64,000 nucleotides of DNA from Octopus sinensis (lineage: Eukaryota): assembly GCF_006345805.1 (NCBI RefSeq), contig NC_043003.1:7812001-7876000 (forward strand). Direction: 5' to 3'. This document shows, piece after piece, positions 302 through 60,690 of this stretch. The translations under genes and the position numbers were made by a program. The notes under the pieces were generated by a model. The model saw only the letters and a program-made list of their open reading frames with translations, ran no database searches and was not told the DNA's origin. How positions within the stretch are numbered: position 1 is the first letter of the stretch; every line of letters starts with the position of its first letter.

Positions 302-378
302 TACAGACAGACAGATAGATAGATAGATAGACGAACAGACAGATGGACACACTCACACACACACACACACACACACAT

Positions 379-413
<35 letters not shown>

Positions 414-418
414 TATAT
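250..418. repeat. Compound microsatellite (GATA)n/(GACA)n/(CA)n flanking the Tx1 3' end
   Basis: Direct reading: long agat/agac runs with a CA run, ending immediately before the Tx1 terminal AATAAAGAAA (minus strand). Confidence 0.95.
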
Positions 419-808
419 GTTTCTTTATTAGCCACACAGGGCTGCACACAGATAGAACAAATTACAAGGTAGAGCTTTTCTTTTGAAGGTTAAAAAAAAA
501 AAAAAAAAAAAAAAGGAAGGGGGAGTTTCGATCAAAAGGGATCGTAAAAGGAGAGAAAGAGGACAAAAAAAGGGGGGTTAAAAAAAAAAAAAAAAAAAAG
601 GGGGAGAGGAAAAAAAATGATCAATAGGGATCGTTATCACAGAAATGTCAATATGAAGTGTAAAGGGGAGGACAGGTGAGGTTACCCGTGGAAAGAAAAG
701 CCTACGGAAAAGACACGGTAACCTCGGTCAATGAAGTCACATTTTATATTTCTTTTTTTTTTTTTTTTTTTTTGCAAATAAGCAACTCTCTGTTTTCGAT
801 TTCTGGGT

Positions 809-3800
809 TCATAGGACTATGCTCAAGGTGGCTTCGTCATTCATACGTGCCATTCTTGCTACATTCACCACTTTTTTTAAAACATTCGCTAGACAAACTT
901 CCTTTCTCAACTTTCCCGGTACTTGAAGAAGTTGATGAGAGATTGACCAGAGAGGAAAGTGTTTGTCTCCAATCCTTTCAGACGCGTCCACCAGATACAT
1001 TCTTTCGCCATAGCCACAAGGATGATGAAAATAGCTCTTCCTTCCCGTTTGAAGGAAGGAGGCGTGACAATATTGACGATAGACTCAGCTGATAAACCGA
1101 CTCGTCCCACACGTGACAGCAGTTGTTCGACATAAGCCCACAGGTCGGAAATTGTTGGACACTGAACGAGTGCGTGCAGAACGGTTTCGTCGCTCTGACC
1201 GCATCTCGGGCAGGTCGGCCCCGTTTCTCGAGCCATGTCTGTAGAGCTTATCCGAACGGGTAGCGCTTCTCGGTAGCACTGCCAGGCCAGGGATCTCTGG
1301 AAGTTGTCCATGGGCCCTGGCCCGAAAGTCGTCCCGAACAGGCGGGTCAGGTACTCCTCGTCGACGTCCAGGTTCGCCCCGAGCTCGTCGTCGTACCTCC
1401 CCTCCACTAAACCCCTATAGAATGCTTTGGTTGTGTTGAAGTCACTTAAGGTCGACCCAGGACGGCAGAGTTGCTTGAGAGCAACGCGACACTCGCGGTG
1501 CCATTCGCCCTTCCTCGGCCTCTTTTGATCCACGACTGCAATTCGGTCATGGAGACGAGCTGCGGGAAAGCGTGCCTCACAAACGGCGACCACACCTGTT
1601 CACCGTCGTCTACATAGAGCCAGAGATGTCGCAGTCTCAGCGCGTGTCTGCGCATCATCAACCACGGCATGCCCAGCCCTCCTTTTAACGGGTGTTGACA
1701 GCAAATGGATCGCCTGACCATCGGGACGCATCCTTTCCACAAGAAGCGAAAGAGGATGCGTTGTAGTTTGGTGATGGTAGGGTCGGGACAAGGTACGACG
1801 GTCAGGCGGTAGTAGATGACGGACGCGATGTACGTGTTCGCCACCTCCGCTCGACCTTTTAGGGACAGTTTCCTCTCGGCCCATTGCCGGGCGAGAGTGA
1901 CCACCCTACTCGTTATCTCGTTCCAGTTCTTCTCCACTTGGAGGTCCGGACCAAACCAGACCCCGAGCAACTCAACCGGGCCGTCGGTCCAGCGTCCCAC
2001 GACGGAGGCGCTGGTGGACGGCATGGGCTTGCTTCTCCAGGTGCCTAGTCGCAAGCCCACTGACTTTTCCCGGTTGATTTTCGCTCCTGTCACCGCTTCG
2101 TAGTTTTTCAGTGTCTCGCCGACCAGCTCGATGTGCTCGTGGCTAGACACTATGACGGTGACGTCGTCCGCGTATGCAGACACGCTCGTCCCGCATCCCA
2201 ATTCTCGCGGGATGCCCCTTAGAGTCGCCAGCTTCCGCAGTAGTGGCTCAAGAGTCAATACGTATAGAAGCGCCGAGAGGGGGCATCCCTGACGGACCGA
2301 GACGACGAATGTCGAAAGGTCTCGATAGATGTCCATTTACGCGAATTACCGAACGGATGCCTCTGTACAAGGCAGCTATCCAGCCGCGGAAGACGGGACC
2401 GAAACCAGCCGCTCTCAGGACTGCCTCCAAGTATCGATGGTCTACCCTATCAAAGGCTTTCGATTGATCCAAGTTGATCAGGGCCCCACCCATGCCAGGT
2501 TCGTTAACTACCCTGTCTATGATGTAGCGCATCAGATGGAGGTTGTCATGGATGGTCCGGCCTGGCACGGCGCATGTTTGCGCCTTGTCGACCAGTTTCT
2601 CGATGACAAGCGCCAACCTCTTGGCTAGCACCTTGGCCAAAATTTTCAAGTCTGCATTAAGCAGAGTGATGGGCCTAAAGTTATCTATTACATTTCCCTT
2701 GTTTAGATCTTTCTTCAGCAGTGTTACGGCTCCTCGGCTCACAAAACCAGGAATGCTCCCGTTTTGCTGCCAGTTGCAGTACACCGCCGCCAAGAGATCT
2801 CCAAACAAGTCTGGCATACAATTGTAAAGCTCGTAGGGTAGACCATCCAAACCCGGTGATTTGTCCCTCGAGCATTCTGCCATCGCTTCCCGCACTTCCG
2901 CCGCCGTGATGGCACCTTCGCAGCACCCTGCCTTTCTTGTCGAGAGTCGTGGTATGGTATGTAGGTAGGCATGAAACCCTACCCTTCTCTCCCCTCCACT
3001 CGTTCCGAACAGTCGGGCAAAATGCTGTGCTGAAAGGCCTCACACATTTTACTTGGCTCGAGCAATTCGCGCCCCTGTTCATCTACCAGTGACCGAATGG
3101 TGGCTTTGTTGCCCTGTTGCGCCTCTGCCACCCGGGCCTCTCTCGCGGCTCCAACACCTTCGTTCCTTAGAGCACGCATCCTAGCTCTGACAGCACATCC
3201 TTCGTGTTTGGCGTTGAAGTGTTGGTCGAGGGCCAACCTCGCCGCCAAAACGTCGGATGCGATGCCGCTTCTAATTGCCTCTTCTAGCTTCTTAACTAGC
3301 TCACCCTCTACTCTATTTCTATCTATGGCTAGTGCTTTGCTGTACCTAATCGCTTCTGCTTTTACTGCTCTCTTGAGGGCAAACCACCATTTGTGTGATG
3401 ATGGCTCCCGTCAAAGCCCTCTTTACTAGTGTGCTAATCCGGTCTCTGAAAACTTGTCTCGATGGGAAAGACGCGTTTAGTTCCAGTATCCGGGACCCTG
3501 CCTAAGTGTCTTATCTAAGTCTAGCGTACATGTCACAAGTTTGTGATCCGTGTAGCTGACTATGTGGAATTGTGGACATCCTATGCTATCTCTATCTACT
3601 GTCCTACACAGTATCCTATCTAGATACGATCTCGACGACCCGATGCGGTTGCTCCATGTCCACGTTGGCGCATTCGGGTGGTCTAGTCGGAACCTGTCAG
3701 ACAGTTGAAAGCGTCTGAGCAGGTCTCTGAGGCATTTGCATCCCCGTCTATTCCTATCTCTACCCACGTAGTCTACATGCGTGTCCAAGGTAGCATTCCA

Positions 3801-4222
3801 ATCCCCCATAAGAGTAAAGGACGAGACGTTCCCAAGAAAACTTCTAGACGTTGAAAGAAATCCGCCCGACCTGTTAAGGGCGGTGCGTAAACTGATACGA
3901 GTCGAAAAGCGCACCCATTGCTGCCGTCGACATCCAGGACGACCAGTCTACCCTCCGGGTCTACGAATATTGTCCTTACATTGAGATCCAGACTCTTGTG
4001 AAAAAGTACCGCGGTGCCACTACCGCCCATTCTCGGCAGACAGGGGGAAAAATAAATGTTGAACTGTCCGCCAAACATGGTCTTTAGGGCCCGCGGATTG
4101 TGGAGTCTGGTCTCGCTTATGGCTATGATTTGTAACTTATGTGACTTTATGTCATTTAAGAGGTACCTTGTTTCCAAGGGGACCCCAAGCCACGCGCATT
4201 TACACACACCAATCTTGATCAT
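809..4222 (-). pseudogene. Tx1 ORF2 (APE endonuclease + reverse transcriptase + Zn finger), frameshifted as assembled
   Basis: Frames join across ORFs 3773-4222, 3477-3914, 2979-3248, 2248-2895, 1446-2336, 907-1593 and 809-1000. Motifs: ISETR, SVYAP, MGDWNA, YLDRI, TDHK (APE); LDQSKAFDRVDH, VRQGCPLSALLY, AYADDV (RT); CPRCGQSDETVLHALVQC. Confidence 0.92.
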
Positions 4223-4253
4223 AGTTCTAATGAATTAGAATACAGAGGGTTAC

Positions 4254-6549
4254 TTACTGCTCGAAAGTTTTTGCTTTCTCCTCCGTTGGTTTGTCCTCGA
4301 GAAGATCCCAGTACAGTTTCTTTGTGAGATATTTTTGGCATTTACCAACCGCACTGGGGAAAATGCCTTTGAGTGTGTTGCAGACTTTTGGAGATGTGTA
4401 ATATTTTGATGTGGTCTGGTGGTGTTGTGTATGGGTGATTGTGTTTTTTATGTCTCTTCTGTTATGTTGTTTTTGATTGATGTATTCCATCAAATTTGTG
4501 TTTTTGGTGTCTATGGCTGTGAGCATGTTTGCTGTATATGTTTTTGTGGTGTTGGTGTGGCTGTTGTTTGCGTTGGGTTTTGAAATGTCTTCGGGAGATG
4601 TATTTCCCCCTGCTTTGTTCGTGTTTGCATTTGGTTTGGTTGTGTTTCTGCTCTTTATTTTCCTTCTTTTTGTAGCTATTTGCCATTCCTCACTGGTTTC
4701 GTCTTCCGACGAAATTTCTGAGGAATCAGAAGGGGGTAGGGGTATGTTGTGGGCTTCTATGTATGTCTGTGTAAGTGGTTGTGTTGTTGTTTTCGTTGTT
4801 GTTGGTTGTTGAGTGTTTGTGTGTGTTGAGTGCGGTATAAGGGATGGGGGATCAGTTTGTGTGTGTTTTCTTTGTTTTTCTGTTCCTTTGGGTTTTGCTG
4901 TCGTTCTTGGTGTTGGAATTGGTTTATTTGTTGTTGGTGTGTGATGATTCTGTCTTGGCGCTGGTGTTGGTGTTGTTTGGTTGGGTTGGCTTGTTCTTTG
5001 TTGTTTTTCCTGCATTTCCGCATACAGCTTCTTGACTAGCTGTCCATATTGTGGTGTGGGCAATAATCCTGGCTTTTGTGATTTTTCCTGTGGCTGTTGT
5101 TGTTGTTGTAATTTTGCGGCAGATTTGCACTCCTTTTTGAGGTGTGCCTCACTGCCACATGTATAGCATCGTGGCCTTCTGCCCTCGACTACTACGTATA
5201 ACTTGCGGCCATCCTCAAGATGTACGTGGGTGGGGATTTTATTTATGTCCTCTTGACTTATGTGGAAGAGGAACTCTATTCTCTTTCCCAGCCAGTCCTT
5301 GTTTTCCGAAACACCGATATCTAGGATGTTTAAGTCCTCCATTTCGGATGTTAATGCGGATGTAATCCACAGTGTTGTAGTCACTTGGGGGACACCACTG
5401 ATAATGACTTTCGTCACCTTCTGGCCGAGGTAACTCGGTGTCAACGTTAGTTCATCAGAATGAAGGGTTATCGTTGGAATTCTTCGCCAACTCTTCATTC
5501 TGAAAAACCACCTGTACGTGTGCGAACTTGTTCGCCCAAGTCACACAATCCTTGTATCCCAGATGGGGCGTAAGCACTTTTCGACTTTGTCTGTGCTTGC
5601 CTTTTCTGGACTTTTTGTTTTTTTATTTGTGTTTTATATACAATTGTCTTTTTTTCTCCTCATTCAGTATGTGCTGAGGTATGTGTAAGAGTATTTTTCC
5701 GTTTTGATTTGTAATAAGGTTTCTGCAATCTTTAATCTGTTGTGTAGTAAACGAAACTTTTGTTACCTTTTCTTTTATCGCCTCGGCGAAGTTTGTTGTT
5801 GTTTTGTTATTGTTGTTACTGCCGGTGGTGTTGGTGTTGATGGCAGGGGTGTGGGTTGTAGGTTTGTGGTTGCTGATTATGCAACTAGCAAAGGGTGGAA
5901 AATTGCCTGCGTAATTTAGTCCTGCATTAGCGCAAATTTCGGCATTTCGTTTGCTTGTCGTCGTTATTTTTTCACTTGTTGGTGATGGAGTGAGCAGTGG
6001 TTGAAGGGAATTGTTGTTGTCGTCGTTGTGTTGTTGTTGTTGTTGTTGTATTGTCGTTCTTGGTGACGGCGGTGGTGTTGGTAGTATTAGTGGCATTGAC
6101 GGCACGGTCTTTGGTGGCGGTGATGGTGATGTTGGTGTTGTTATTGGTGGCGATATCTTTAGTAGGGATAGCAGTTTTAGTAGCAGATTCTGCCATGGTG
6201 TGGTGGTGGTGGTTGACTCACTGATGGTGTTGACGGTGCTTGGCCTTGCGACCTTTGTTTTGTATTTGTTGCTGTTGATGGTGGTGGAGTTGTCAGGTTC
6301 GGCGTATGCTAACAGAGCATCCTGTTTTTCTGTTTCTGCGTCACGCTTCACTTGCAACTCAGCCTCGTGGTGGCCAGTGGCGATGGTGAGTGCGGCGTTA
6401 GATTTGTTGTTGTTGTTGGTGGTGGTGGTGATGGTGGTGACAGCGGTGTTCACGCTGCGATGTTTAGTAGCCAGTGGTAGCAATAGTGTTTTGCTACCGT
6501 TCTGCATGACTGGCGGGCTAGCCACATGGTTTCTAGTTGCCATTTTCAA
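4254..6549 (-). pseudogene. Tx1 ORF1 (gag-like), split into 5623-6549 and 4254-5498 as assembled
   Basis: CYTCGSEAHLKKEC zinc knuckle (~5090-5170). The bridging frame reads ...WANKFAHVQVVFQNEELAK..., suggesting one ORF broken by indels. Extensive T/N/Q/P low-complexity sequence. Confidence 0.75.
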
Positions 6550-6769
6550 AATGAAAAATGGCTAAAAAACCCACGAAAGTTTTGAAAGTTCTTTTTGTAA
6601 TTTCGCCCATACAGGGGCGGAATTCTACGTGAATAATTCTCAGGTTTTTTAGTGAATGAACTTGCACAACGATTAAAACAAAATATTTGACAACAAGGAG
6701 TTTTAAACATGTAAAAGTGGCCAACTTACGTGGAGCCGATATGACTATCGTCCGTCCATTGTGTAGATA

Positions 6770-6790
6770 TAGACAGACAGACAGACAGAC

Positions 6791-6863
<73 letters not shown>

Positions 6864-6864
6864 T

Positions 6865-6904
<40 letters not shown>

Positions 6905-11462: not shown

Positions 11463-11799
11463 ATGTTATTTTAGTCATATTCTAATATCAATCCCCTTTA
11501 CGTTTTTCTACGCATTTCTTTGTGAAAATATTTCATTATTTGTAACAATCGATAAATGCTACATAAACAAACGCATGGACAACATCTGGGAAGACCCCCG
11601 CAGTGCGTCATAGCAGCTGAAATTTTATTTCGTTTCCAAACAATATTTCTTTGTAAAACATCTGCTAACCGCACATTCGCCATTAAATATTTGCTCATCT
11701 CAAGCAGTAGATATATCCTTCCCCTCAGACACACACACACACATACACACGCACAAAACATACAAAGACACGCACAAACACACACACAGAAACATACTT

Positions 11800-12032
11800 A
11801 TTTCTTTACTATCCACAAAGGGCCAAACACAGAGAGGACAAACAAGGACAGACAAACGAAAATAAGTCGATTATATCGACCCCATTGCGTAACTGGTACT
11901 TATTTAATCGACCCCGAAGGGAGGAAAGGCAAAGTCGACCTCGGCGGAATTTGAACTCAGAACGTAGCAGCAGACGACATACTGCTAAGCATTTTGCCCG
12001 GCGCGCTAACGTCTCTGCCAGCTCGCCGCCTT
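11800..12032 (-). mobile_element. SINE family M monomer with tail A
   Basis: Full head ggcggcgagctggcagagacgttagcgcgccggg; ends ...gtaaagaaata|agtatg. Confidence 0.85.
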
Positions 12033-12520: not shown

Positions 12521-12592
12521 ACCGTGATCGTCTAATGGTTAGGACCCCACGTTGTGGCCGTGGTAACCCAGGTTCGAATCCTGGTCACGGCA
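12521..12592 (+). tRNA. tRNA-His(GTG), with two G>A deviations
   Basis: Cloverleaf: acceptor ACCGTGA/TCACGGC, anticodon stem CCACG/CGTGG with GTG at 12554-12556, T arm CCAGG-TTCGAAT-CCTGG, discriminator A, TTTTT terminator at 12608-12612. Otherwise matches the invertebrate tRNA-His sequence as I recall it. Confidence 0.9.
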
Positions 12593-13309: not shown

Positions 13310-13872
13310 TTAAGGCGGCGAACTGGCAGAAACGTTAGCACGCCGGGCGAAATGCCGTTACGTTCTGAGTTCAAATTCCGCCGAGGTCGACTTTGCCTAT
13401 CATCCTTTCGGGGTCGATTAAATAGGTACCAGTTACGCACTGGTGTCAATATAATCGACTTAATCCGTTTGTCTGTCCTTGTTTGTCCTCTCTGTGTTTC
13501 GCTCTTTGTGGGTCGTAAAGAAATAGGTATTTTGTCTGTCTTTACACACTGAGTTCAAATTTCACCGAGGTCGACTTTGCCTTTCATCCTTTCGGGGTCG
13601 ATTAGATAAGTACCAGTTACGCACTGGGATCGATATAATCGACTTAATCCGTTTGTCTGTCCTTGTTTGTCCTCTCTGTGTTTAGCTCCTTGTGGGTAGT
13701 AAAGAAATAGGTATTTTGTCTGTCTTTACACACTGAGTTCAAATTCCGCCGAGGTCGACTTTGCCTTTCATCCTTTCGGGGTCGATAAATTAAGTACCAG
13801 TTGCATACTGGGTCGATGTAATCGACTAGTCCCAACACAAAAATTTGGAGCCTTTGAGTCTAGAGTAGAAAA
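13310..13872 (+). mobile_element. SINE family M trimer (head + A + A + B)
   Basis: Single head, then three ~180-bp units joined at aaagaaata|ggtattt (~13525, ~13710). Confidence 0.9.
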
Positions 13873-17730: not shown

Positions 17731-17762
17731 AGTTATTATTATTATTATTTTATTATTATTAT

Positions 17763-17805
<43 letters not shown>

Positions 17806-17823
17806 TGTAGTAGTAGTAGTAGT

Positions 17824-17871
<48 letters not shown>

Positions 17872-17873
17872 TT

Positions 17874-18607
17874 GAGTGAGAGGGCAGTGCATGGCATCAA
17901 AGTAATACTGGGGTAAAATAAACAAAGTCCAGTATACCCATCATGACTACCCGTCTGATAAGGTTATACCAGGCACATGCATCACAACCATAAGTGCGCG
18001 ATATAGTGATCTCATATCAAGATAAACAGCGCATCATCTTGCATGTGAGGCCCAGTTAGAATTTTCTTCAGGTTGAGAAGCCTATCCCGCTCAAAAGGCC
18101 CCTGAATAAAGGTTGTTTAAGGATGTTGAACGAAATACCCATGTTTCCAAAGGTGAATTATTCAAACTCCAAAGACTTCTAAACACATGCCTGTGATGCT
18201 CCCCACTACCTCTGCTCGTGATCAGAGATGCACATATTGTCAGCCACTAAGGGACATGCTCAACTGGTTAAGGTCAAACAACTGACAAGCGGAATTTGAA
18301 CTCACGTCTGCCGTTACGTTGTGAGTTCAAATTCCGCCGAGGTCGACTTTACTTTTCATCCTTTCGGGGCCGATAAATTAAGTACCAGTTACGCACTGGG
18401 GTCGATGTAATCGACTTAATACCTATGTCTGTCCTTGTTTGTCCCCTCTATGTTTAGCCCCTTGTGGGTAATAAACAAATAGGTATTAAGCAGAATATTT
18501 GCTGTAGCCCATCTTTTATACCAAGACAAAACAATGTACATGACACCACTTCCAATCAGTTAAGATCGGAAGCCGCGATAGCCACAACCTGGTACAGCAT
18601 CAGGACA
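17874..18607 (-). mobile_element. Unclassified ~555-bp non-coding element, copy 1, interrupted by a family M SINE (18289-18481)
   Basis: End-to-end reverse-complement match to 43917-44471 once the SINE is removed; flanked by (TAG)n and (TTA)n. The strand is assigned by analogy only. Confidence 0.85.
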
Positions 18608-19447
18608 TTTATTATTATTGTTGTTGTTGTTGTTGTCATCATCATCATCATCATTATTATTATTGTAAGGCCTTTAGTTTCGTTTTTCGTGTTTGCATGA
18701 TTTTAATCATTTTCAAGGCACCTGTCATTATATGGATTTGAGTTCTGCTTAAAATCTGCAACGATCAGCACGTTGATCCTTATCTCTATTTCTAGAACAT
18801 TTTATCTGGATAATTTCTCTTTTTTAATAATCTATCAGCTGAAGTGTCCCATACGTCAGTTAGGATGAATTTCCTTTCGTGCAACTCTTTGACAGCAATA
18901 TCCGCTTCGATTTATCATGATCCGCTTGTCTGTGTGGGTTGCCAAATTCCAAACTAATCATCTCTTTCCGTTCATATCCGAATCTAGGCTTCTATCAATG
19001 TTGCATCCGGTATCCTATTCTAATAGTTATGACACATAGTTTATATAACCCAAAAAGGTTAAATCCCAAATTTAACCTCGGAGCGCAGAAATTCGGAACC
19101 AGCACATTGAGGCATTTCGTTTGACACTGACAACTCGCCGCCTGCTTTATGTGTATGTATATATATATATAAGTTCAGCAAAACAACCAAATCTTAGTCA
19201 GTCAGTTGAGGGACTCCACTACCTCATATGTTCTTAAAATTTAACTCCACATCTTTGTCTATATATCTACCTTCTCTATAATGTTGCCACTTGATTTGAA
19301 AATTTTTGTATTAATGGAAAACCTCTATAATTGGCTGATGAGTACTCAGCATCTTAAATCTGTTGTAATACTTACAACATTTAATAAAATGATGTAGTAC
19401 GAAATGATCGTACCAAATTACCGGAGTAATTTTTGTTGCTTATTCTG

Positions 19448-28223: not shown

Positions 28224-28490
28224 AAGGCGGCAAGCTGGCAGAAACGTTAGCACGCCGGGCGAAATGCTTAGCGGTATTTCGTCTGCCGTTACGTTGTGAG
28301 TTCAAATTCCGCCGGGGTCGACTTTGCCTTTCATCCTTTCGGGGTCGATAAATTAAGTACCAGTTACGCACTGGGGTCGATGTAATCGACTTAATACCTA
28401 TGTCTGTCCTTGTTTGTCCCCTCTGTGTTTAGCCCCTTGTGGGTAATAAAGAAATAGGTATTTCGTCTGCTGCTACGTTCTGAGTTCAGT
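28224..28490 (+). mobile_element. SINE family M monomer plus start of a second unit
   Basis: Complete head; tail A ...agccccttgtgggtaataaagaaata|ggtatttcg (junction 28456/28457). Confidence 0.9.
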
Positions 28491-31427: not shown

Positions 31428-32048
31428 TAAGGCAACGAACTGATAGAAACGTTAGCACGCCAGACGAAATTATGCTTAGCGGTATTTCGTCTGCCGCTAC
31501 GTTCTGAGTTCAAATTCCGCCGAGGTCGACTTTGCCTCTCATCATTTCGGGGTCGATTGAATAAGTACCAGTTACTGGGGTCGATATAATCGACTTAATC
31601 CGTTTGTCTGTCCTTGTTTGTCCTCTCTGTGTTTAGCCCCTTGTGTGCAGTAAAGAAATAGGTATTTCGTCTGCCGCTAAGTTCTGAGTTCAAATTCCGC
31701 CGAAGTCGACTTTGCCTTTCATATTTTCGGGGTCGATTAAATAAGTACCAGTTACGCACTCGGGTCGATGTAATCGACTTAATCCCTTGTCTGTCCTTGT
31801 TTGTTCCCTTTATGTTTAGGCCCTTGTGAGCAATAAAGAAATAAGAAACGTCAGCACGCCGGGCGAAATTAAGCTTAGCGGTTTTTCGTCTGCCTTTACA
31901 TTCTGAGTTCAAATTCCACCGAGGTCGACTTTGCATGTCATCCTTTCTGAGTCGATAAATTAAGTACCAGTTGCGTACTGGGGATCGATCTAATTCACTG
32001 GACCCTTCCCCCAAATTTCGGGCCTTGTGCTTAGATTAGAAAAGAATA
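31428..32048 (+). mobile_element. SINE family M trimer
   Basis: Junctions aaagaaata|ggtatttcg (~31660) and aaagaaata|agaaacgtcagc (~31845); terminal tail B. Confidence 0.9.
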
Positions 32049-40650: not shown

Positions 40651-41581
40651 AGAAGAAGAAGATTTTTTATCATCCACTAAGGATTCACAAAAATATTGAA
40701 GCCCGTACATGACGAAACAATGAGGACTTGCATAAAAGATCGTGTAAAAAGAAGGATAATAAGGAAAAGTATCTTTATTAATATAACTACAACTACGACG
40801 ACGACGACGACCACCACCACCACCACCACCTCCATCACAGTCACCACCACCACCACCATCACGGGGACCATCATGACTACGACTATTATTTTGCCTTCTT
40901 AATCTGTTTTATCATCTCGCATTTCCTTGTTTACGATTCTTTCACTCGGCTTTTGAAAAACATTGGTATTCACACTTAGATTTTTGCCAATTCATTCACT
41001 CAGGTTTTTTTATAATACTCAAAGATGTTTTCTAAAGGCAGAACCAAAACAGTTCTTTCCAGCTTTTGTCGTATTATGTTTGGACATTTGAAGAATCTAC
41101 GAAAGCTACTAACAAAATTAAAACTACAACTATTTATATATTGACTACGGAAGGGTGCTTTCAATTTTGACTCAAACTTCTCATCAAATTATACTATCAG
41201 CGATAAAGTGAGAGATACTAACAGCCTGAAGTACATATCGTTAGACGTAGACAAATATAGGTATATCATATACCATAAAAAAATCCTTGACTACGCTGAG
41301 TTACTTCCCTTAGCGCATTTTTGGTTAAATTGTGCAAATTATAAAGTCCACAAATGTGTGAGATTTTTCCATTTTTTCTTTATAAATACTAAGTCCCTGC
41401 TAGTGAGGATTAGGTCGGACAATTATACTGCTGATGGCTATTGAGCCAGAAACACATGTCAACGACGGTTCCCTTATTTTCAGAGAATAAGTTTATCTTA
41501 GTCGAAAGGTCTTCGACTAAGGAGAAAAACTGGAGATAAGTCTGGACAATTGTCGGGTTGATGACGGTTATTGAGGCAGAA

Positions 41582-41975
41582 TAAAAGGCGTCGAGCTGGC
41601 AGAATCGTTAGCACGCCGGGCGAAATGCTGAGTGGTATTTCGTCTGCCGTTACGTTCTGAGTTCAACTTACACCGAGGTCGACTTTGCCTTTCATCCTTT
41701 CGGGGTCGATAAAATAAAGTACCAGTTACGCACTGGGGTCGATGTAATCGACTTAATCCGTTTGTCTGTCCTTGTTTCTCGCCTCTGTGTGTAGCCCCTT
41801 GGGAGTAGTACAGAAATAGGTATTTCGTCTGCTGCTAAGTTCTGAGTTCAAATTCTGCCGAGGTCGACTTTGCCTTTCATCCTTTCGGGGTCGATTAAAT
41901 AAGTACCAGCTACGCTCAGGGGTTGATATAATCGACTTAATCCGTTTGTCTGTCCTTGTGGGTAGTAAAGGAATA
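41582..41975 (+). mobile_element. SINE family M dimer with 16-bp TSD
   Basis: GGTTATTGAGGCAGAA at 41566-41581 and 41976-41991; both units end in tail A (the second is internally deleted). Confidence 0.92.
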
Positions 41976-43289
41976 GGTTATTGAGGCAGAAATACATGTT
42001 TAGTACTGTCTTCTTATCTCCAGACAATAACCCAGTCCTTTTCCTTAATGCCATGTCAATTTTGGAGAATACTGGAATCTTGAGTTTATCTCCTGTTCTC
42101 AAGAGGAGCTGGTCTTAATTGCCACTTGGTAATTATGCTACAACCTCTAGAGGTGGAGATGATTTCAATAAATCAAAAATTTATGCTGTGTGATCGTAGC
42201 TATACTTCTATTTGTATATGTTGTACAATTATATGTCACTCACCCCCAAATTATTTTTCTTGGCTCATTTATATTTAAATCATGTCATTAGTCACTTGAC
42301 TAAAGAGTCGTCGGGTTTTAATGCCACGAGTTGCTTTGCGTTGTGTCTGGGTAAATGTATTAATGCCTCCCCTCCCCCACTTCCAAAGAATTGATAGAGA
42401 CGAAACAAAACAAGCTCAAAGTGATCCACCAACTAGAAACTGATGGTTAATTTAGTGGTTTACAATGTCAGATTTTACTTATTACGAAATAAAATAACTA
42501 TTTTCTGGTAGAAAAAAAGTAGTCAAAATTATCTGATTATTTCTGTTGCTTATAATATCATTCGCAGATAAAAGAATAAAAAACGACAATATTTCAAATG
42601 GAATTTGAAATAAGAGATAATTCTACAACACAGTTCACAGAGATACTACCTCTCCCCTACATTTCGACACAATTTATTTTAAAATCTGTTACAACAAGAC
42701 TAAATTAACAACAAATAATATAAAACAAACTGTTTGATTATTCAGTAAGTTATGTTATTTTTTTCTTTTTAATGTCTTGTATTTATTTTCTGTTCTTCGT
42801 ATTTACCAAACTAGATTCAGCCGAGAATAAATATCTCTTGGACTCACGTTTAAATCCTTCGTCGCAACGTGTATTTATCTCCAATTTCAAGAAACCTGGC
42901 ATTATACAATGGACCCTATTAAATTCCAGTCATTCATAAATCACCGTGTACAGTTGGAATTTGAGTATTAAATAACAAGTAAAAAAAAAATATAATGTAA
43001 ACCAAAGCCAGGAATTGGAGTTGATTCCAAGTTGACTTTAATTCTATTTATCTCACTGATGATTATGCTCAAGCTTTGTGTGCTATTAGTTTCTTATTCC
43101 TGTAATTTGAAAAAAAATTTTTTTTTTTGAAAATACGTTTATTTCCAAGACGCCAGCATTACAACGTTTCTTCATAATCTCAGAACACAATGACACAGTC
43201 AACAATAAAACGTTATTCAACGCCGCAATTTAATAACACTTTTTCCAATACGAAAATAACTCTATATTATGCTTTTCCAAACAATAATG

Positions 43290-43820: not shown

Positions 43821-43851
43821 GCAGAGAAGATCATTCTGCCAGCTCACCGCC

Positions 43852-43916
<65 letters not shown>

Positions 43917-44471
43917 TGTCCAGATGCAGTACCAGGCAGTGGCTCTCATGGCTTCTGATCTTAACTGATTGCAAGTGTTATCATGTACATTGTTTTGTCT
44001 TGGTATAAAAGATGGGCCACAGCAAATATTCTGCTCAATACCACAGATTTGCTTGTCAGTTGTTTGACCATAACCTGTTGAGCATGTCCCTTAGTGGCTG
44101 ATGATATGTGCATCTCTGATCACGAGCAGAAGTAGTGAGGGAGCATCACAGCTATGTGTTGAGAGGGATTCTTTGGGGTTTGAATAATTCACCTTTGGAA
44201 ACAGGGGTGTTTCGTTCAACATCCTTAAACAACCCTTATTCAGGGATCTTTTGTGCGGGATGGGCTACTCGACCAGAACAAAATTCTAACTGGGCCCCAC
44301 CTACAAGGTCATGTGCTGTTTGTCTTGATATGAGATCACCATGCCGCACACATATGGTTGTGATGCATGTGCCTAGTGTACCCTTATCAGACGGGTAGTC
44401 AAGATGGGTATACTGGGCTTCGTATATTTTACCCCAGTGTCACTTTGATGGCATGCACTGCTCTCTCACTC
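43917..44471 (+). mobile_element. Unclassified ~555-bp non-coding element, copy 2, embedded in (AAT)n
   Basis: Same termini as copy 1; pure (AAT)n on both sides. Confidence 0.85.
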
Positions 44472-44519
<48 letters not shown>

Positions 44520-53574: not shown

Positions 53575-53772
<198 letters not shown>

Positions 53773-54078
53773 TATTCATATTATTCAAAATATTCAACGT
53801 AAACACGAAGTTTCTACCTTTATAAACAAGGGGTTACAACACCTTTACTTGTGAGATTTTTGCTGCCCTGGTATCTATTTATTAATTTTTCTGTGTTAAT
53901 TGTTAACAAGGTAAAAGTACACTCATCTATTTATAACATATATATATATACATATATATGTAGGTCCCGGGTTGAGTCGGGGTTTACCACAGTAAATAAG
54001 GTACTCAATACATTGCCGAGTAATTAATTTATTTTATCTAGAAAATATAATATATATATATATAATATATATATATAG

Positions 54079-54850: not shown

Positions 54851-55058
54851 GAGAAAGAGGCAACAAGAATGGATTAGTTTTTAGTACAATTGTTTCATAC
54901 AAGACAGGCTTTATTAAAAGTTGCAAATATTGCAGCAGATAAAAGTGTCCCGTACTCATCAGCTAATATCTGCTGCAATATTTGCAACTTTTAATAAAGC
55001 CTGTCTTTGTATGAAACAATTGACTAAAAACTAATCCATTCTTGTTGCTTCTTTCTCG
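54851..55058. repeat. ~90-bp-arm inverted repeat with ~26-bp spacer (also ~56545-56750)
   Basis: gagaaagaggcaacaagaatggattag...gcagcagata / tatctgctgc...ctaatccattcttgttgcttctttctc. Confidence 0.92.
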
Positions 55059-55091
55059 TATATATATAATATATATATACATATATATATA

Positions 55092-55131
<40 letters not shown>

Positions 55132-55574
55132 TATATCTATGCATATATATATATAAATACATATATATATGTGTGTGTGTGTATGTGTATATATATATAT
55201 ACATATATATATGTATGTGTGTATGTATATATATATTATATATATGTGTGGGTGTGGTGTGTCTGTATATATATATATATTTATTCATACATATATATCT
55301 GTGTGAGTGTATGTGTGTGTGTGTTTGTGTGTGGTGTGTGTGTGTGTATGGTGTGTGTGTGAAAGTAAAAATACTTGTTTACACCTGCGTTAACTCCATT
55401 TTTTATTCATATTATTCAAAATATTCAACGTAAACACGAAGTTCTACCTTTATAAACAGGAGTTACAACACCTTTACTTGTGAGATTTTTGCTGCCCTGG
55501 TAACTATTTATTTATTTTTCCTCGTGTTAATTGTTAACAAGGTAAAAGTACACTCATCTATTTATTTAATATAT

Positions 55575-56407: not shown

Positions 56408-56784
56408 ATATAATATATATATATAAAAGCAATTAAGATTCAAGTCAATTCTAATGAATTTACTTGAATGCGGTACTTAACTTAGATGCACCAGAAAACT
56501 GTTGGTGTTAACCATACAGTATGTGGGGTGGGTGATATAAAACGAGAAAGAGGCAACAAGAATGGATTAGTTTTTAGTACAATTGTTTCATACAAAGACA
56601 GGCTTATTAAAAGTTGCAAATATTGCAGCAGATAAAAGTGTCCCGTACTCATCAGCTAATATCTGCTGCAATATTTGCAACTTTTAATAAAGCCTGTCTT
56701 TGTATGAAACAATTGACTAAAAACTAATCCATTCTTGTTGCTTCTTTCTCGTATATATATAATATATATATACATATATATATA

Positions 56785-56824
<40 letters not shown>

Positions 56825-57267
56825 TATATCTATGCATATATATATATAAATACATATATATATGTGTGTGTGTGTATGTGTATATATATATATACATATA
56901 TATATGTATGTGTGTATGTATATATATATTATATATATGTGTGGGTGTGGTGTGTCTGTATATATATATATATTTATTCATACATATATATCTGTGTGAG
57001 TGTATGTGTGTGTGTGTTTGTGTGTGGTGTGTGTGTGTGTATGGTGTGTGTGTGAAAGTAAAAATACTTGTTTACACCTGCGTTAACTCCATTTTTTATT
57101 CATATTATTCAAAATATTCAACGTAAACACGAAGTTCTACCTTTATAAACAGGAGTTACAACACCTTTACTTGTGAGATTTTTGCTGCCCTGGTAACTAT
57201 TTATTTATTTTTCCTCGTGTTAATTGTTAACAAGGTAAAAGTACACTCATCTATTTATTTAATATAT

Positions 57268-60097: not shown

Positions 60098-60690
60098 GGT
60101 GAGCTGGTTGAAACGATAGCACGCCGGGCGAAATGCTTAGCGGTATTTCGTCTGCCGCTACGTTCTGAGTTCAAATTCCGCCGAGGTCGACTTTGCCTTT
60201 CATCCTTTCGGGGTCGATTAACTAAGTACTAGTTACGCACTGGGGTCGATGTAATCGACTTAATACCTATGTATGTCCTTGTTTGTCCCCTCTGTGTTTA
60301 GCCCCTTGTGGGTAGTAAAGAAATAGAAATAGGTATTTCGTCTCTGCCGCTACGTTCTGAGTTCAAATTCCGCCAAGGTCGATTTTGCCTTTCAACCTTT
60401 CGAGGTCGATAAATTAAGTACCAGTTACGCAGTGTGGTCGATATAATCAACTTAATCCGTTTGTCTGTCCTTGTTTATCCCCTCTATGTTTAGCCCCTTG
60501 TGGGCAATAAAGAAATAGGAATCGTTACCATGTCGGACTAAATGCTCAGCGGCATTTCGTCCGTCTTTACGTTCTGAATTCACATTCTGCCGATGTAGAC
60601 TTTGCCTTTCAATCTCGACGTCGGTAAAATATGTACTAGTTAAATATACGATCAATGTAACTGACGCGCCCTTTCTCTTCAAAAGTGCTT
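60098..60690 (+). mobile_element. SINE family M multimer within a cluster of older copies (59714-60090)
   Basis: Junctions aaagaaatagaaata|ggtatttcg (~60332) and aataaagaaata|ggaatcgtta (~60518). Confidence 0.85.

What the first reader, a model, noticed from the sequence alone, without database searches (positions are those of the whole stretch)
18289..18495. Independent support for the GGTATT target: tail-A SINE inserted into an unrelated element, with a 5' inversion
The uninterrupted copy (44020-44060, reverse complement) reads ...gacaagcaaatctgt|GGTATTgagcag. In copy 1 the SINE ends aataaacaaata directly before GGTATTaagcag, so the motif comes from the host element, not the SINE. Eight target bases (aaatctgt) are lost, and 18289-18305 is the reverse complement of 18321-18337, a short inverted duplication of the kind seen at retrotransposon 5' junctions.
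Basis: seen in the sequence. Interest (0 to 1): 0.7.

Follow-up and report, generated by a model that had tools for sequence, protein, structure and literature searches.

The report
Truncated octopus SINE inserted at GGTATT
A shortened copy of a common octopus short retroposon (SINE) sits inside an unrelated repeat, joined at a GGTATT hexamer that both the repeat and the retroposon family carry; it is a real but fairly ordinary irregular insertion that only partly proves a GGTATT "target".

Summary
One of two copies of a ~555-bp repeat carries a 191-bp insert at 18291-18481. The other copy (43915-44475, minus strand) is uninterrupted and reads aaatctgt|GGTATT there. The insert is positions 57-233 of a 233-bp "tail-A" SINE, preceded by 14-17 nt that are the exact reverse complement of SINE 73-89. 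Eight host bases are missing and there is no target-site duplication, whereas canonical copies have 16-17-bp duplications.

- GGTATT is also SINE position 50-55, so the hexamer is a 6-bp overlap. In 9 other junctions the "GGTATT after tail A" simply continues into the next SINE unit.
- The insert starts just after that motif, so it spans almost exactly one array period.
- The inverted piece copies sequence inside the direct part, so it is snap-back rather than classical twin priming.

A preference for GGTATT-like sites does look real and specific to tail A: 10 of 15 tail-A flanks against 0 of 18 tail-B flanks. Tail A matches the 3' end of an L1-like LINE in the window.

Best reading: reverse transcription primed at GGTATT, with irregular 5' resolution. 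Capture at a double-strand break is not excluded. Interest is modest.

The parts
17870..18290 (+). Host ~555-bp repeat, copy 1, part upstream of the insert (matches positions 1-425 of the uninterrupted copy)
   Evidence: BLAST 88.7% identity; global alignment
18289..18290 (.). GC shared by the host sequence (gacaaGC) and the inverted segment: 2-nt overlap at the 5' junction
   Evidence: Read
18291..18304 (-). Inverted segment, reverse complement of SINE positions 74-87. With the shared bases it forms the 17-nt arm 18289-18305, which pairs with 18321-18337
   Evidence: Exact reverse complement; hairpin -18.9 kcal/mol, z = -5.7; expected by chance 3e-4 per window
18305..18481 (+). Direct segment: tail-A SINE positions 57-233 (5'-truncated body plus complete tail A)
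   Evidence: 96.6% identical to 28280-28456; groups with A28224_U1 and A60102_U1 in the unit tree
18482..18487 (+). GGTATT: 6-bp overlap between host (position 434-439 of the uninterrupted copy) and SINE position 50-55
   Evidence: Three-way alignment, where the hexamer is the only block shared by all three sequences at the junction; GGTATT census
18482..18607 (+). Host repeat copy 1, part downstream of the insert
   Evidence: BLAST 89.7% identity to positions 434-559 of copy 2
43915..44475 (-). Uninterrupted host repeat copy 2. It holds aaatctgt at 44043-44050 and its only GGTATT at 44037-44042
28224..28456 (+). Closest full-length tail-A SINE, used as the coordinate reference 1-233. It is followed by SINE 50-81 at 28457-28488
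418..6760 (-). Frameshifted LINE: ORF1 with CCHC knuckle, AP endonuclease, RT and zf-RVT. Its last ~50 nt are homologous to SINE tail A, so it is the likely partner LINE. It is flanked by (TCTA)n on both sides
   Evidence: Pfam hits; tail alignment score 27 against shuffles 8.1 +/- 1.5, max 16; flanks; RT nearest to human L1 ORF2p
41585..41975 (+). Tail-A dimer flanked by a 16-bp target-site duplication GGTTATTGAGGCAGAA (41566-41581 and 41976-41991): a canonical insertion at a GGTATT-like site outside any SINE
11799..12032 (-). Tail-A monomer. Its 3' flank aGTATGTTTCTGTGT repeats the 5' flank GTATGTTTTTTGTGT
   Evidence: read by eye; the low-complexity flank defeats the automatic duplication search
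13312..13872 (+). Array: head, A unit, A unit, B unit with tail B. The whole array is flanked by a 17-bp duplication. Units 2 and 3 share 29 nt with private variants starting at GGTATTTT
31429..32044 (+). Array: head, A unit, A unit, then SINE 17-168 with tail B. Flanked by a 16-bp duplication
60102..60665 (+). Array with a young A unit, an older A unit and an old unit (95%, 90% and 75% identity to the reference), nested in an older SINE

Best explanation
The block 18291-18481 is a recent, 5'-truncated retroposed copy of a LINE-dependent short retroposon. It belongs to the tail-A family of an octopus SINE superfamily and was integrated into a pre-existing copy of an unrelated ~555-bp repeat.

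Proposed steps:
1. (Inferred) The bottom strand of the host was opened next to its only GGTATT. Its 3' end (…AATACC) primed reverse transcription of a tail-A RNA at the end of tail A.
2. (Shown) The hexamer at the junction is common to the host and to the sequence that follows tail A in most genomic copies.
3. (Shown) Copying ran through tail A and the body to SINE position 57.
4. (Inferred) The nascent end was then extended for 14-17 nt on its own product, or on a second priming site of the RNA. This gave an inverted duplicate of SINE 73-89.
5. (Shown) That end was joined to the upstream host DNA at a 2-nt GC overlap.
6. (Inferred) The top strand was broken 8 nt upstream of the first break, not ~16 nt downstream. 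This explains why 8 bp are lost and no target-site duplication exists (both shown).

At family level, tail-A copies prefer GGTATT-like sites. Every SINE of the superfamily carries GGTATTT at position 50-56, so most insertions land in other SINEs and build head-to-tail arrays. The host-repeat case is a rare hit outside a SINE.
For: - Identity of the insert: 96.6% to a full-length tail-A copy, covering 57-233.
- Retroposon nature of the family: 16-17-bp target-site duplications around canonical copies and whole arrays. Tail A is homologous to the last ~50 nt of a LINE with AP endonuclease, RT and zf-RVT.
- Order of events: the host copies differ by 10.4%. The insert differs by only 3.4% from its nearest relative and sits in the youngest clade, so the uninterrupted paralogue shows the pre-insertion state.
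- Junction: the host's single GGTATT coincides with the junction (about 0.002). The 3' end of the insert is the canonical family end at position 233, as in monomers.
- Family preference: 10/15 tail-A against 0/18 tail-B 3' flanks are GGTATT-like (p = 3e-5). Two of 4 non-SINE tail-A flanks are within one edit of GGTATT (p = 5.5e-4). One of these is the true 16-bp duplication GGTTATTGAGGCAGAA.
- Arrays are not simple local duplications. Units of one array belong to different lineages in A41585 and A60102. The terminal units are a different subfamily, with a B-type core and tail B.
- Literature: target deletions, 5' truncation and junction microhomology are described variants of target-primed reverse transcription for L1 (PMC2912911, PMC1920257). 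A link between the first bases of target duplications and the RNA 3' end is reported for RTE-related SINEs (PMC6007223).
Against: - There is no target-site duplication, so nothing shows that a LINE endonuclease made the break.
- The hexamer cannot be assigned to host or donor.
- Only 1 of 28 non-SINE GGTATT sites in the window is occupied, and a second GGTATTTCGTT-like site in the same host copy (18134-18139, minus strand) is empty.
- The only tail-A copy in 62 kb of Octopus bimaculoides is at AATAATATAAGG.
- The partner LINE itself lies in (TCTA)n, not at GGTATT.
- This model does not explain why the direct part begins exactly after the SINE's own GGTATTT (about 1-in-80 coincidence).
- There are only two host copies and one window, with no reads and no empty allele.
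Confidence: 0.55

Rival explanations
1. Capture at a double-strand break. A break in the host repeat, not made by a LINE endonuclease, was repaired by microhomology-mediated joining. The filler was a SINE cDNA or RNA, or was copied from a genomic SINE array. The right end annealed at GGTATT because array-derived donors carry tail A followed by GGTATT. Snap-back synthesis made the inverted piece, and the left end joined at GC. In this reading GGTATT says nothing about a target preference.
For: No target-site duplication, an 8-bp deletion, and overlaps at all three joints (2, 1 and 6 nt). These are the hallmarks listed for non-classical L1 insertion (PMC1920257). Nine genomic junctions read tail A followed by GGTATTTCGTCTG, so donors carrying the hexamer are common.
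Against: The 3' end is intact and lies at the canonical family end, whereas endonuclease-independent inserts are usually 3'-truncated. The same GGTATT-like 3' flank occurs in a canonical insertion with a 16-bp duplication (41566-41581 and 41976-41991) and is specific to tail A. This points to the normal integration machinery.
Confidence: 0.25
2. Unit-length template. The transposing molecule was one array period: SINE 57-233 followed by GGUAUUU. It could be an RNA cut or terminated at GGUAUUU|C, or a unit circle. It was primed at GGTATT, the polymerase ran off the template end at position 57, and it snapped back there. The same templates would add seamless units to resident SINEs and build the arrays.
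For: The direct part starts at 57, the base after the SINE's GGTATTT, and ends at 233 followed by GGTATT. That is one 184-nt period minus one T. Snap-back is what reverse transcriptases do at template ends (general knowledge). Some copies have GGTATTTT or GGTTTTT at this site, which resembles a Pol III stop.
Against: This is a single case, noticed after the fact. No other isolated unit-length copy occurs in the window or in L008. There is no evidence for such an RNA. Most copies have only TTT at the site. Full-length RNA with homology-guided 5' joining explains the arrays equally well.
Confidence: 0.08
3. Coincidence or artefact. Either the insertion site is random and the hexamer match is chance, or the junction with its small palindrome is an assembly error.
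For: One event only, and no reads are available. GGTATT is a common hexamer: 50 in the window against 43 expected.
Against: The host has one GGTATT in 561 nt and it is the junction (about 0.002). A perfect 17-nt inverted repeat is expected 3e-4 times per window. The insert has 6 private substitutions relative to its nearest relative, as expected for a real aged copy.
Confidence: 0.05

Closest known systems
5'-truncated and 5'-inverted L1/Alu insertions (target-primed reverse transcription, twin priming; PMC2912911)
   Same: Intact 3' end, truncated 5' end, an inverted piece at the 5' junction, and short microhomologies at the 5' and inversion junctions. Target-site deletions are described for truncated L1 insertions.
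   Different: In twin priming the inverted segment comes from RNA upstream of the direct segment, and the insert keeps a normal target-site duplication. Here the inverted 14-17 nt duplicate SINE 73-89, which lies inside the direct segment 57-233, and there is no duplication. 5'-inverted SINE (Alu) insertions are very rare, with one found in PMC2912911.
Endonuclease-independent (non-classical) L1/Alu insertion at double-strand breaks (PMC1920257)
   Same: No target-site duplication, a small target deletion, and microhomology at both ends.
   Different: The 3' end is complete and the site matches the family's usual GGTATT-like flank.
Target-preferring non-LTR retrotransposons of the Tx1 clade and the SINEs they mobilise (PMC4494074)
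   Same: The partner here is an L1-like LINE with AP endonuclease, RT and zf-RVT, lying in a microsatellite. Insertions recur at one short sequence inside another repeat family, as with Tx1 in Tx1D or Tx1-9_AMi in Harbinger elements.
   Different: Clade membership of the LINE was not tested. The preference is loose (GGTATT, GGTTATT, GTATGT, but also AATAAT and AGAAACG). The LINE copy itself is in (TCTA)n.
RTE-related SINEs whose target-duplication start correlates with the 3' repeat of the RNA (PMC6007223)
   Same: The first bases of the target relate to what the template RNA can pair with. This gives a way to read GGTATT as a priming overlap rather than a nuclease motif.
   Different: A different LINE type is involved. 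There is no 3' microsatellite on tail A. The overlap would need RNA that reads through into a following SINE unit.

Membership tests
SINE (LINE-dependent short retroposon) | Short, many dispersed copies | tested here: met
   37 matches to the 233-bp reference in 64 kb; 24 matches in 76 kb of Octopus bimaculoides
SINE (LINE-dependent short retroposon) | Copies flanked by target-site duplications | tested here: met
   16-17-bp duplications around A13312, A31429, A41585 and the L008 monomer. Not met for the 18291-18481 copy itself
SINE (LINE-dependent short retroposon) | 3' tail shared with a LINE | tested here: met
   Tail A aligns to the last ~50 nt of the LINE at 418-6760(-): score 27 against shuffle maximum 16
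SINE (LINE-dependent short retroposon) | Head derived from a tRNA, 5S or 7SL gene with an internal Pol III promoter | tested here: inconclusive
   ARAGORN and Rfam find no tRNA or other RNA family in the head, even at E <= 10. Only a B-box-like GAGTTCAAATTCC is visible by eye
Twin-priming 5' inversion | Inverted segment derives from template sequence 5' of the direct segment | tested here: not met
   Inverted piece = reverse complement of SINE 73-89; direct piece = 57-233
Twin-priming 5' inversion | Normal target-site duplication retained | tested here: not met
   No duplication; 8-bp deletion
Twin-priming 5' inversion | Microhomology at the 5' junction and at the inversion junction | tested here: met
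   GC (18289-18290) and C (18305) are shared
Endonuclease-independent insertion | No target-site duplication, target deletion, microhomology at both ends | tested here: met
Endonuclease-independent insertion | 3'-truncated insert at a site unlike the usual integration site | tested here: not met
   The insert ends at the canonical position 233, and the site is the family-typical GGTATT
Target-specific non-LTR retroposon | Same target sequence at independent insertions in unrelated contexts | tested here: inconclusive
   Non-SINE tail-A flanks are GGTATT, GGTTATT, aGTATG and AATAAT. The excess is significant (p = 5.5e-4) but n = 4
Target-specific non-LTR retroposon | Partner LINE belongs to a clade with a sequence-specific endonuclease | not tested
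   Known only that the RT is nearest to L1 ORF2p among solved structures and that a zf-RVT domain is present. No clade phylogeny was done

The most novel reading that the evidence does not exclude
Tail-A elements are "self-homing" retroposons. The machinery of their L1/Tx1-like partner opens or primes at GGTATT, a motif that every SINE of the superfamily carries at position 50. New copies therefore stack head-to-tail behind the head of resident SINEs and build satellite-like arrays. The exactly unit-length insert in the host repeat would then mean that the transposing template can be a unit-length RNA that starts just after the motif and ends with it.
Probability: 0.2. Interest if true: 0.55.

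Novelty: new member of a known kind. Interest (0 to 1): 0.3.

Why it matters
SINEs make up about a tenth of octopus genomes (PMC13282606), and most families are unclassified. If tail-A elements really prefer a hexamer that lies inside their own superfamily, three things follow:
- It would explain why these SINEs occur as head-to-tail arrays.
- It would give a concrete route from dispersed retroposons to tandem repeats.
- It would assign a partner LINE with a testable site preference.

The single insertion studied here is mainly useful as a dated, paralogue-controlled example of an irregular integration: deletion instead of duplication, snap-back at the 5' end, and a 6-bp overlap at the 3' end.

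Tried and rejected
**More genomic copies (mostly failed)**
- Two exact-pattern scans of metagenome contigs gave no usable copy.
- One scan of prokaryotic genome contigs gave none.
- ENA contigs encoding related LINE proteins (L001, L009) contain neither the SINE nor the host repeat.
- The window's own LINE ORFs are not on record.
- Only one useful outside locus was obtained: L008, 76 kb of Octopus bimaculoides chromosome CM046612.1. It came through a SINE-derived annotated protein and holds one tail-A copy and no host repeat.

**Other searches that led nowhere**
- A full-text search for SINE sequence strings found nothing.
- Searches for a tRNA or other RNA origin of the head were negative.

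**Ideas tested and rejected**
- The A41585 target might be a diverged copy of the host repeat, because its duplication GGTTATTGAGGCAGAA resembles GGTATTGAGCAGAA. Rejected: the flanks do not align above shuffles.
- An empty-site paralogue might exist for the young copy at 28224. Rejected: its right flank belongs to another repeat whose homology starts 14 nt away, so it is not an empty site.
- The arrays might be simple local tandem duplications. Rejected: units of one array fall in different lineages and the terminal units are another subfamily.

Full report
**What is at the coordinates**

The window is eukaryotic repeat-rich DNA, with microsatellites, LINE fragments and a dense short retroposon. 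A SINE-derived ORF matches an annotated Octopus bimaculoides protein. A 76-kb piece of that genome (L008) carries the same retroposon superfamily, so the source is an octopus.

The host "555-bp element" has exactly two copies in the window. They are 17870-18290 plus 18482-18607 (+) and 43915-44475 (-), at 89.6% identity. The minus-strand copy is uninterrupted and reads gacaagc-aaatctgt-GGTATT-gagcag. The plus-strand copy reads gacaagc-[191-nt insert]-GGTATT-aagcag.

The 8 missing bases are the largest of four indels between the copies and lie exactly at the insert. The stretch 18289-18305 is the perfect reverse complement of 18321-18337. It forms a hairpin of -18.9 kcal/mol, z = -5.7. Such a repeat is expected 3e-4 times per window. 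The hexamer is 18482-18487.

**What the insert is**

BLAST of the insert against the window finds about 35 related pieces. Full-length copies define a 233-bp element, with 28224-28456 as reference:
- head, positions 1-49 (aaggcggcgagctggcagaaacgttagcacgccgggcgaaatgcttagc)
- GGTATTT, positions 50-56
- a core conserved to about position 168
- "tail A", positions 169-233, ending gtaaagaaata

A sister family has the same head and core with a different "tail B".

Canonical copies and whole arrays are flanked by 16-17-bp target-site duplications. Tail A is homologous to the last ~50 nt of a frameshifted LINE at 418-6760(-): local score 27, against 8.1 +/- 1.5 (maximum 16) for shuffles. That LINE encodes a CCHC ORF1, an AP endonuclease, an RT and a zf-RVT domain. 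Its RT is closest to human L1 ORF2p among solved structures.

So the family behaves as a LINE-dependent SINE. A tRNA, 5S or 7SL origin of the head could not be shown.

The insert consists of the direct segment 18305-18481, which is SINE 57-233. It is 96.6% identical to 28280-28456 and belongs to the youngest clade. This is preceded by 14-17 nt that are the reverse complement of SINE 73-89.

GGTATT(T) is an internal motif of the SINE, at position 50-56. After tail A, 8 junctions in the window read exactly GGTATT and a ninth reads GGTTTT. All 9 continue as SINE sequence (tcgtctgcc…). These are head-to-tail arrays in which a unit 50-233 follows the head or a previous unit.

At 18482 the hexamer is therefore a 6-bp overlap between the host and what normally follows tail A.

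The direct segment also begins at position 57, the base after the SINE's own GGTATTT. The insert plus hexamer is thus one 184-nt array period minus one T.

Finally, the copy has no target-site duplication.

**Is there a GGTATT preference?**

Evidence that the preference is real:
- Within the host the hexamer occurs once in 561 nt and is the junction, about 0.002 for a random site.
- Tail-A monomers end at …gaaata without the hexamer (window 11799-12032; L008 40606-40899). GGTATT is therefore not part of the SINE's 3' end.
- Across the window and L008, 10 of 15 tail-A 3' flanks are GGTATT-like against 0 of 18 tail-B flanks (Fisher p = 3e-5). Tail-B flanks mostly start AAT… or ATT….
- Among the four tail-A flanks that are not SINE sequence, two are within one edit of GGTATT (p = 5.5e-4). 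These are the host case and the 16-bp duplication GGTTATTGAGGCAGAA around the dimer 41585-41975. A third flank is aGTATGT.
- Arrays are not simple local duplications. Units of one array fall in different lineages (A41585, A60102). The last units are B-type with tail B.
- In A13312 an A-type piece is bracketed by 29 nt of resident sequence with private variants.

Evidence that limits it:
- Only 1 of 28 non-SINE GGTATT sites in the window is occupied. By contrast, 9 of the SINE copies that carry the position-50 motif have a tail-A unit directly upstream of it. The bare hexamer is therefore not sufficient; longer homology to the SINE, or sheer target abundance, also matters.
- The one tail-A copy in O. 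bimaculoides is at AATAATATAAGG.
- Two tail-A junctions go into SINE head position 17.
- The partner LINE sits in (TCTA)n.

**Mechanism**

The most economical account is target-primed reverse transcription started at GGTATT. Copying ran to position 57. A short snap-back or second-priming step then produced the inverted duplicate, and the 5' end joined at a GC overlap. The top-strand break lay 8 nt upstream of the first nick, which gives a deletion instead of a duplication.

The intact canonical 3' end, the tail-A-specific flank, and the same kind of flank in a canonical insertion with a duplication all argue for the normal machinery. Truncation, target deletion and junction microhomology are known variants for L1 (PMC2912911). 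Classical twin priming does not fit, because the inverted piece lies inside the direct segment and no duplication is kept.

The main rival is capture of SINE cDNA or array-templated filler at a pre-existing break (non-classical insertion, PMC1920257). It explains the missing duplication, the deletion and the three overlaps, and it makes the hexamer uninformative about targeting. It fits less well with the complete 3' end.

A more speculative reading is a unit-length template ending in GGUAUUU. It would explain why the copy starts at 57, but it rests on one case.

**Comparison and verdict**

The insertion is an irregular member of a known class of events. The family-level pattern resembles target-preferring L1/Tx1-type systems that insert into other repeats (PMC4494074), and also the link between target start and RNA 3' end seen for RTE-related SINEs (PMC6007223). 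Membership in either class is untested.

The finding is of modest interest on its own. The possible self-homing of tail-A SINEs into position 50 of their own superfamily is the part worth a genome-wide test.

Noticed in passing
window 330-417 and 6761-6870, flanking the LINE at 418-6760(-): The L1-like LINE whose 3' end matches SINE tail A lies between (TCTA)n tracts on both sides. This is what a microsatellite-targeting LINE would look like.
   Followed up: partly
window 17735-17869, 18608-18665, 43850-43914, 44476-44515: Both copies of the ~555-bp host repeat have ATT-type trinucleotide microsatellites at both ends. The element may insert into, or generate, (ATT)n. Its nature is unknown, and it is absent from the 76-kb O. 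bimaculoides locus.
   Followed up: partly
window 41566-41581 and 41976-41991, compared with 44029-44042(-): The target duplication of the A41585 dimer (GGTTATTGAGGCAGAA) matches the host target (GGTATTGAGCAGAA) at 14 of 16 positions, although the surrounding flanks do not align. The preferred site may be longer than the hexamer, or this may be chance (n = 2).
   Followed up: partly
window 13526-13554 and 13710-13738: Units 2 and 3 of one array share 29 nt with private variants (ggtattttgtctgtctttacacactgag) and then diverge into A-type and B-type cores. Resident sequence is duplicated on both sides of an inserted piece, over about twice the usual duplication length.
   Followed up: partly
window 10191, 11084, 31844, 60519; L008 4425 and 69650: A second recurrent junction: tail A or tail B joined to SINE head position 17/18 ((A)GAATCG or AGAAACG). 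Together with the AAT… start of most tail-B target duplications, this suggests a different site preference for the tail-B machinery.
   Followed up: partly
window 12521-12592 (+): An apparently intact tRNA-His (GTG) gene lies between SINE arrays.
   Followed up: no
window 53666-53781, 54901-55007, about 56616-56700; 55069-55228 and 56762-56921: Long near-perfect hairpins (56-nt and 41-nt arms), and a local repeat about 1.7 kb apart that carries one of them. These could be foldback or MITE-like elements or a small segmental duplication.
   Followed up: no
window 18134-18139 (-): The same host copy carries a second site on the opposite strand, GGTATTTCGTTC, which matches the SINE's GGTATTTCGTCT at 10 of 12 positions. 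It is unoccupied.
   Followed up: no
L008 40781-40790: A 10-N assembly gap inside a tail-A SINE of the O. bimaculoides chromosome, with duplicated SINE sequence on both sides. This is a likely assembly artefact at a repeat.
   Followed up: no
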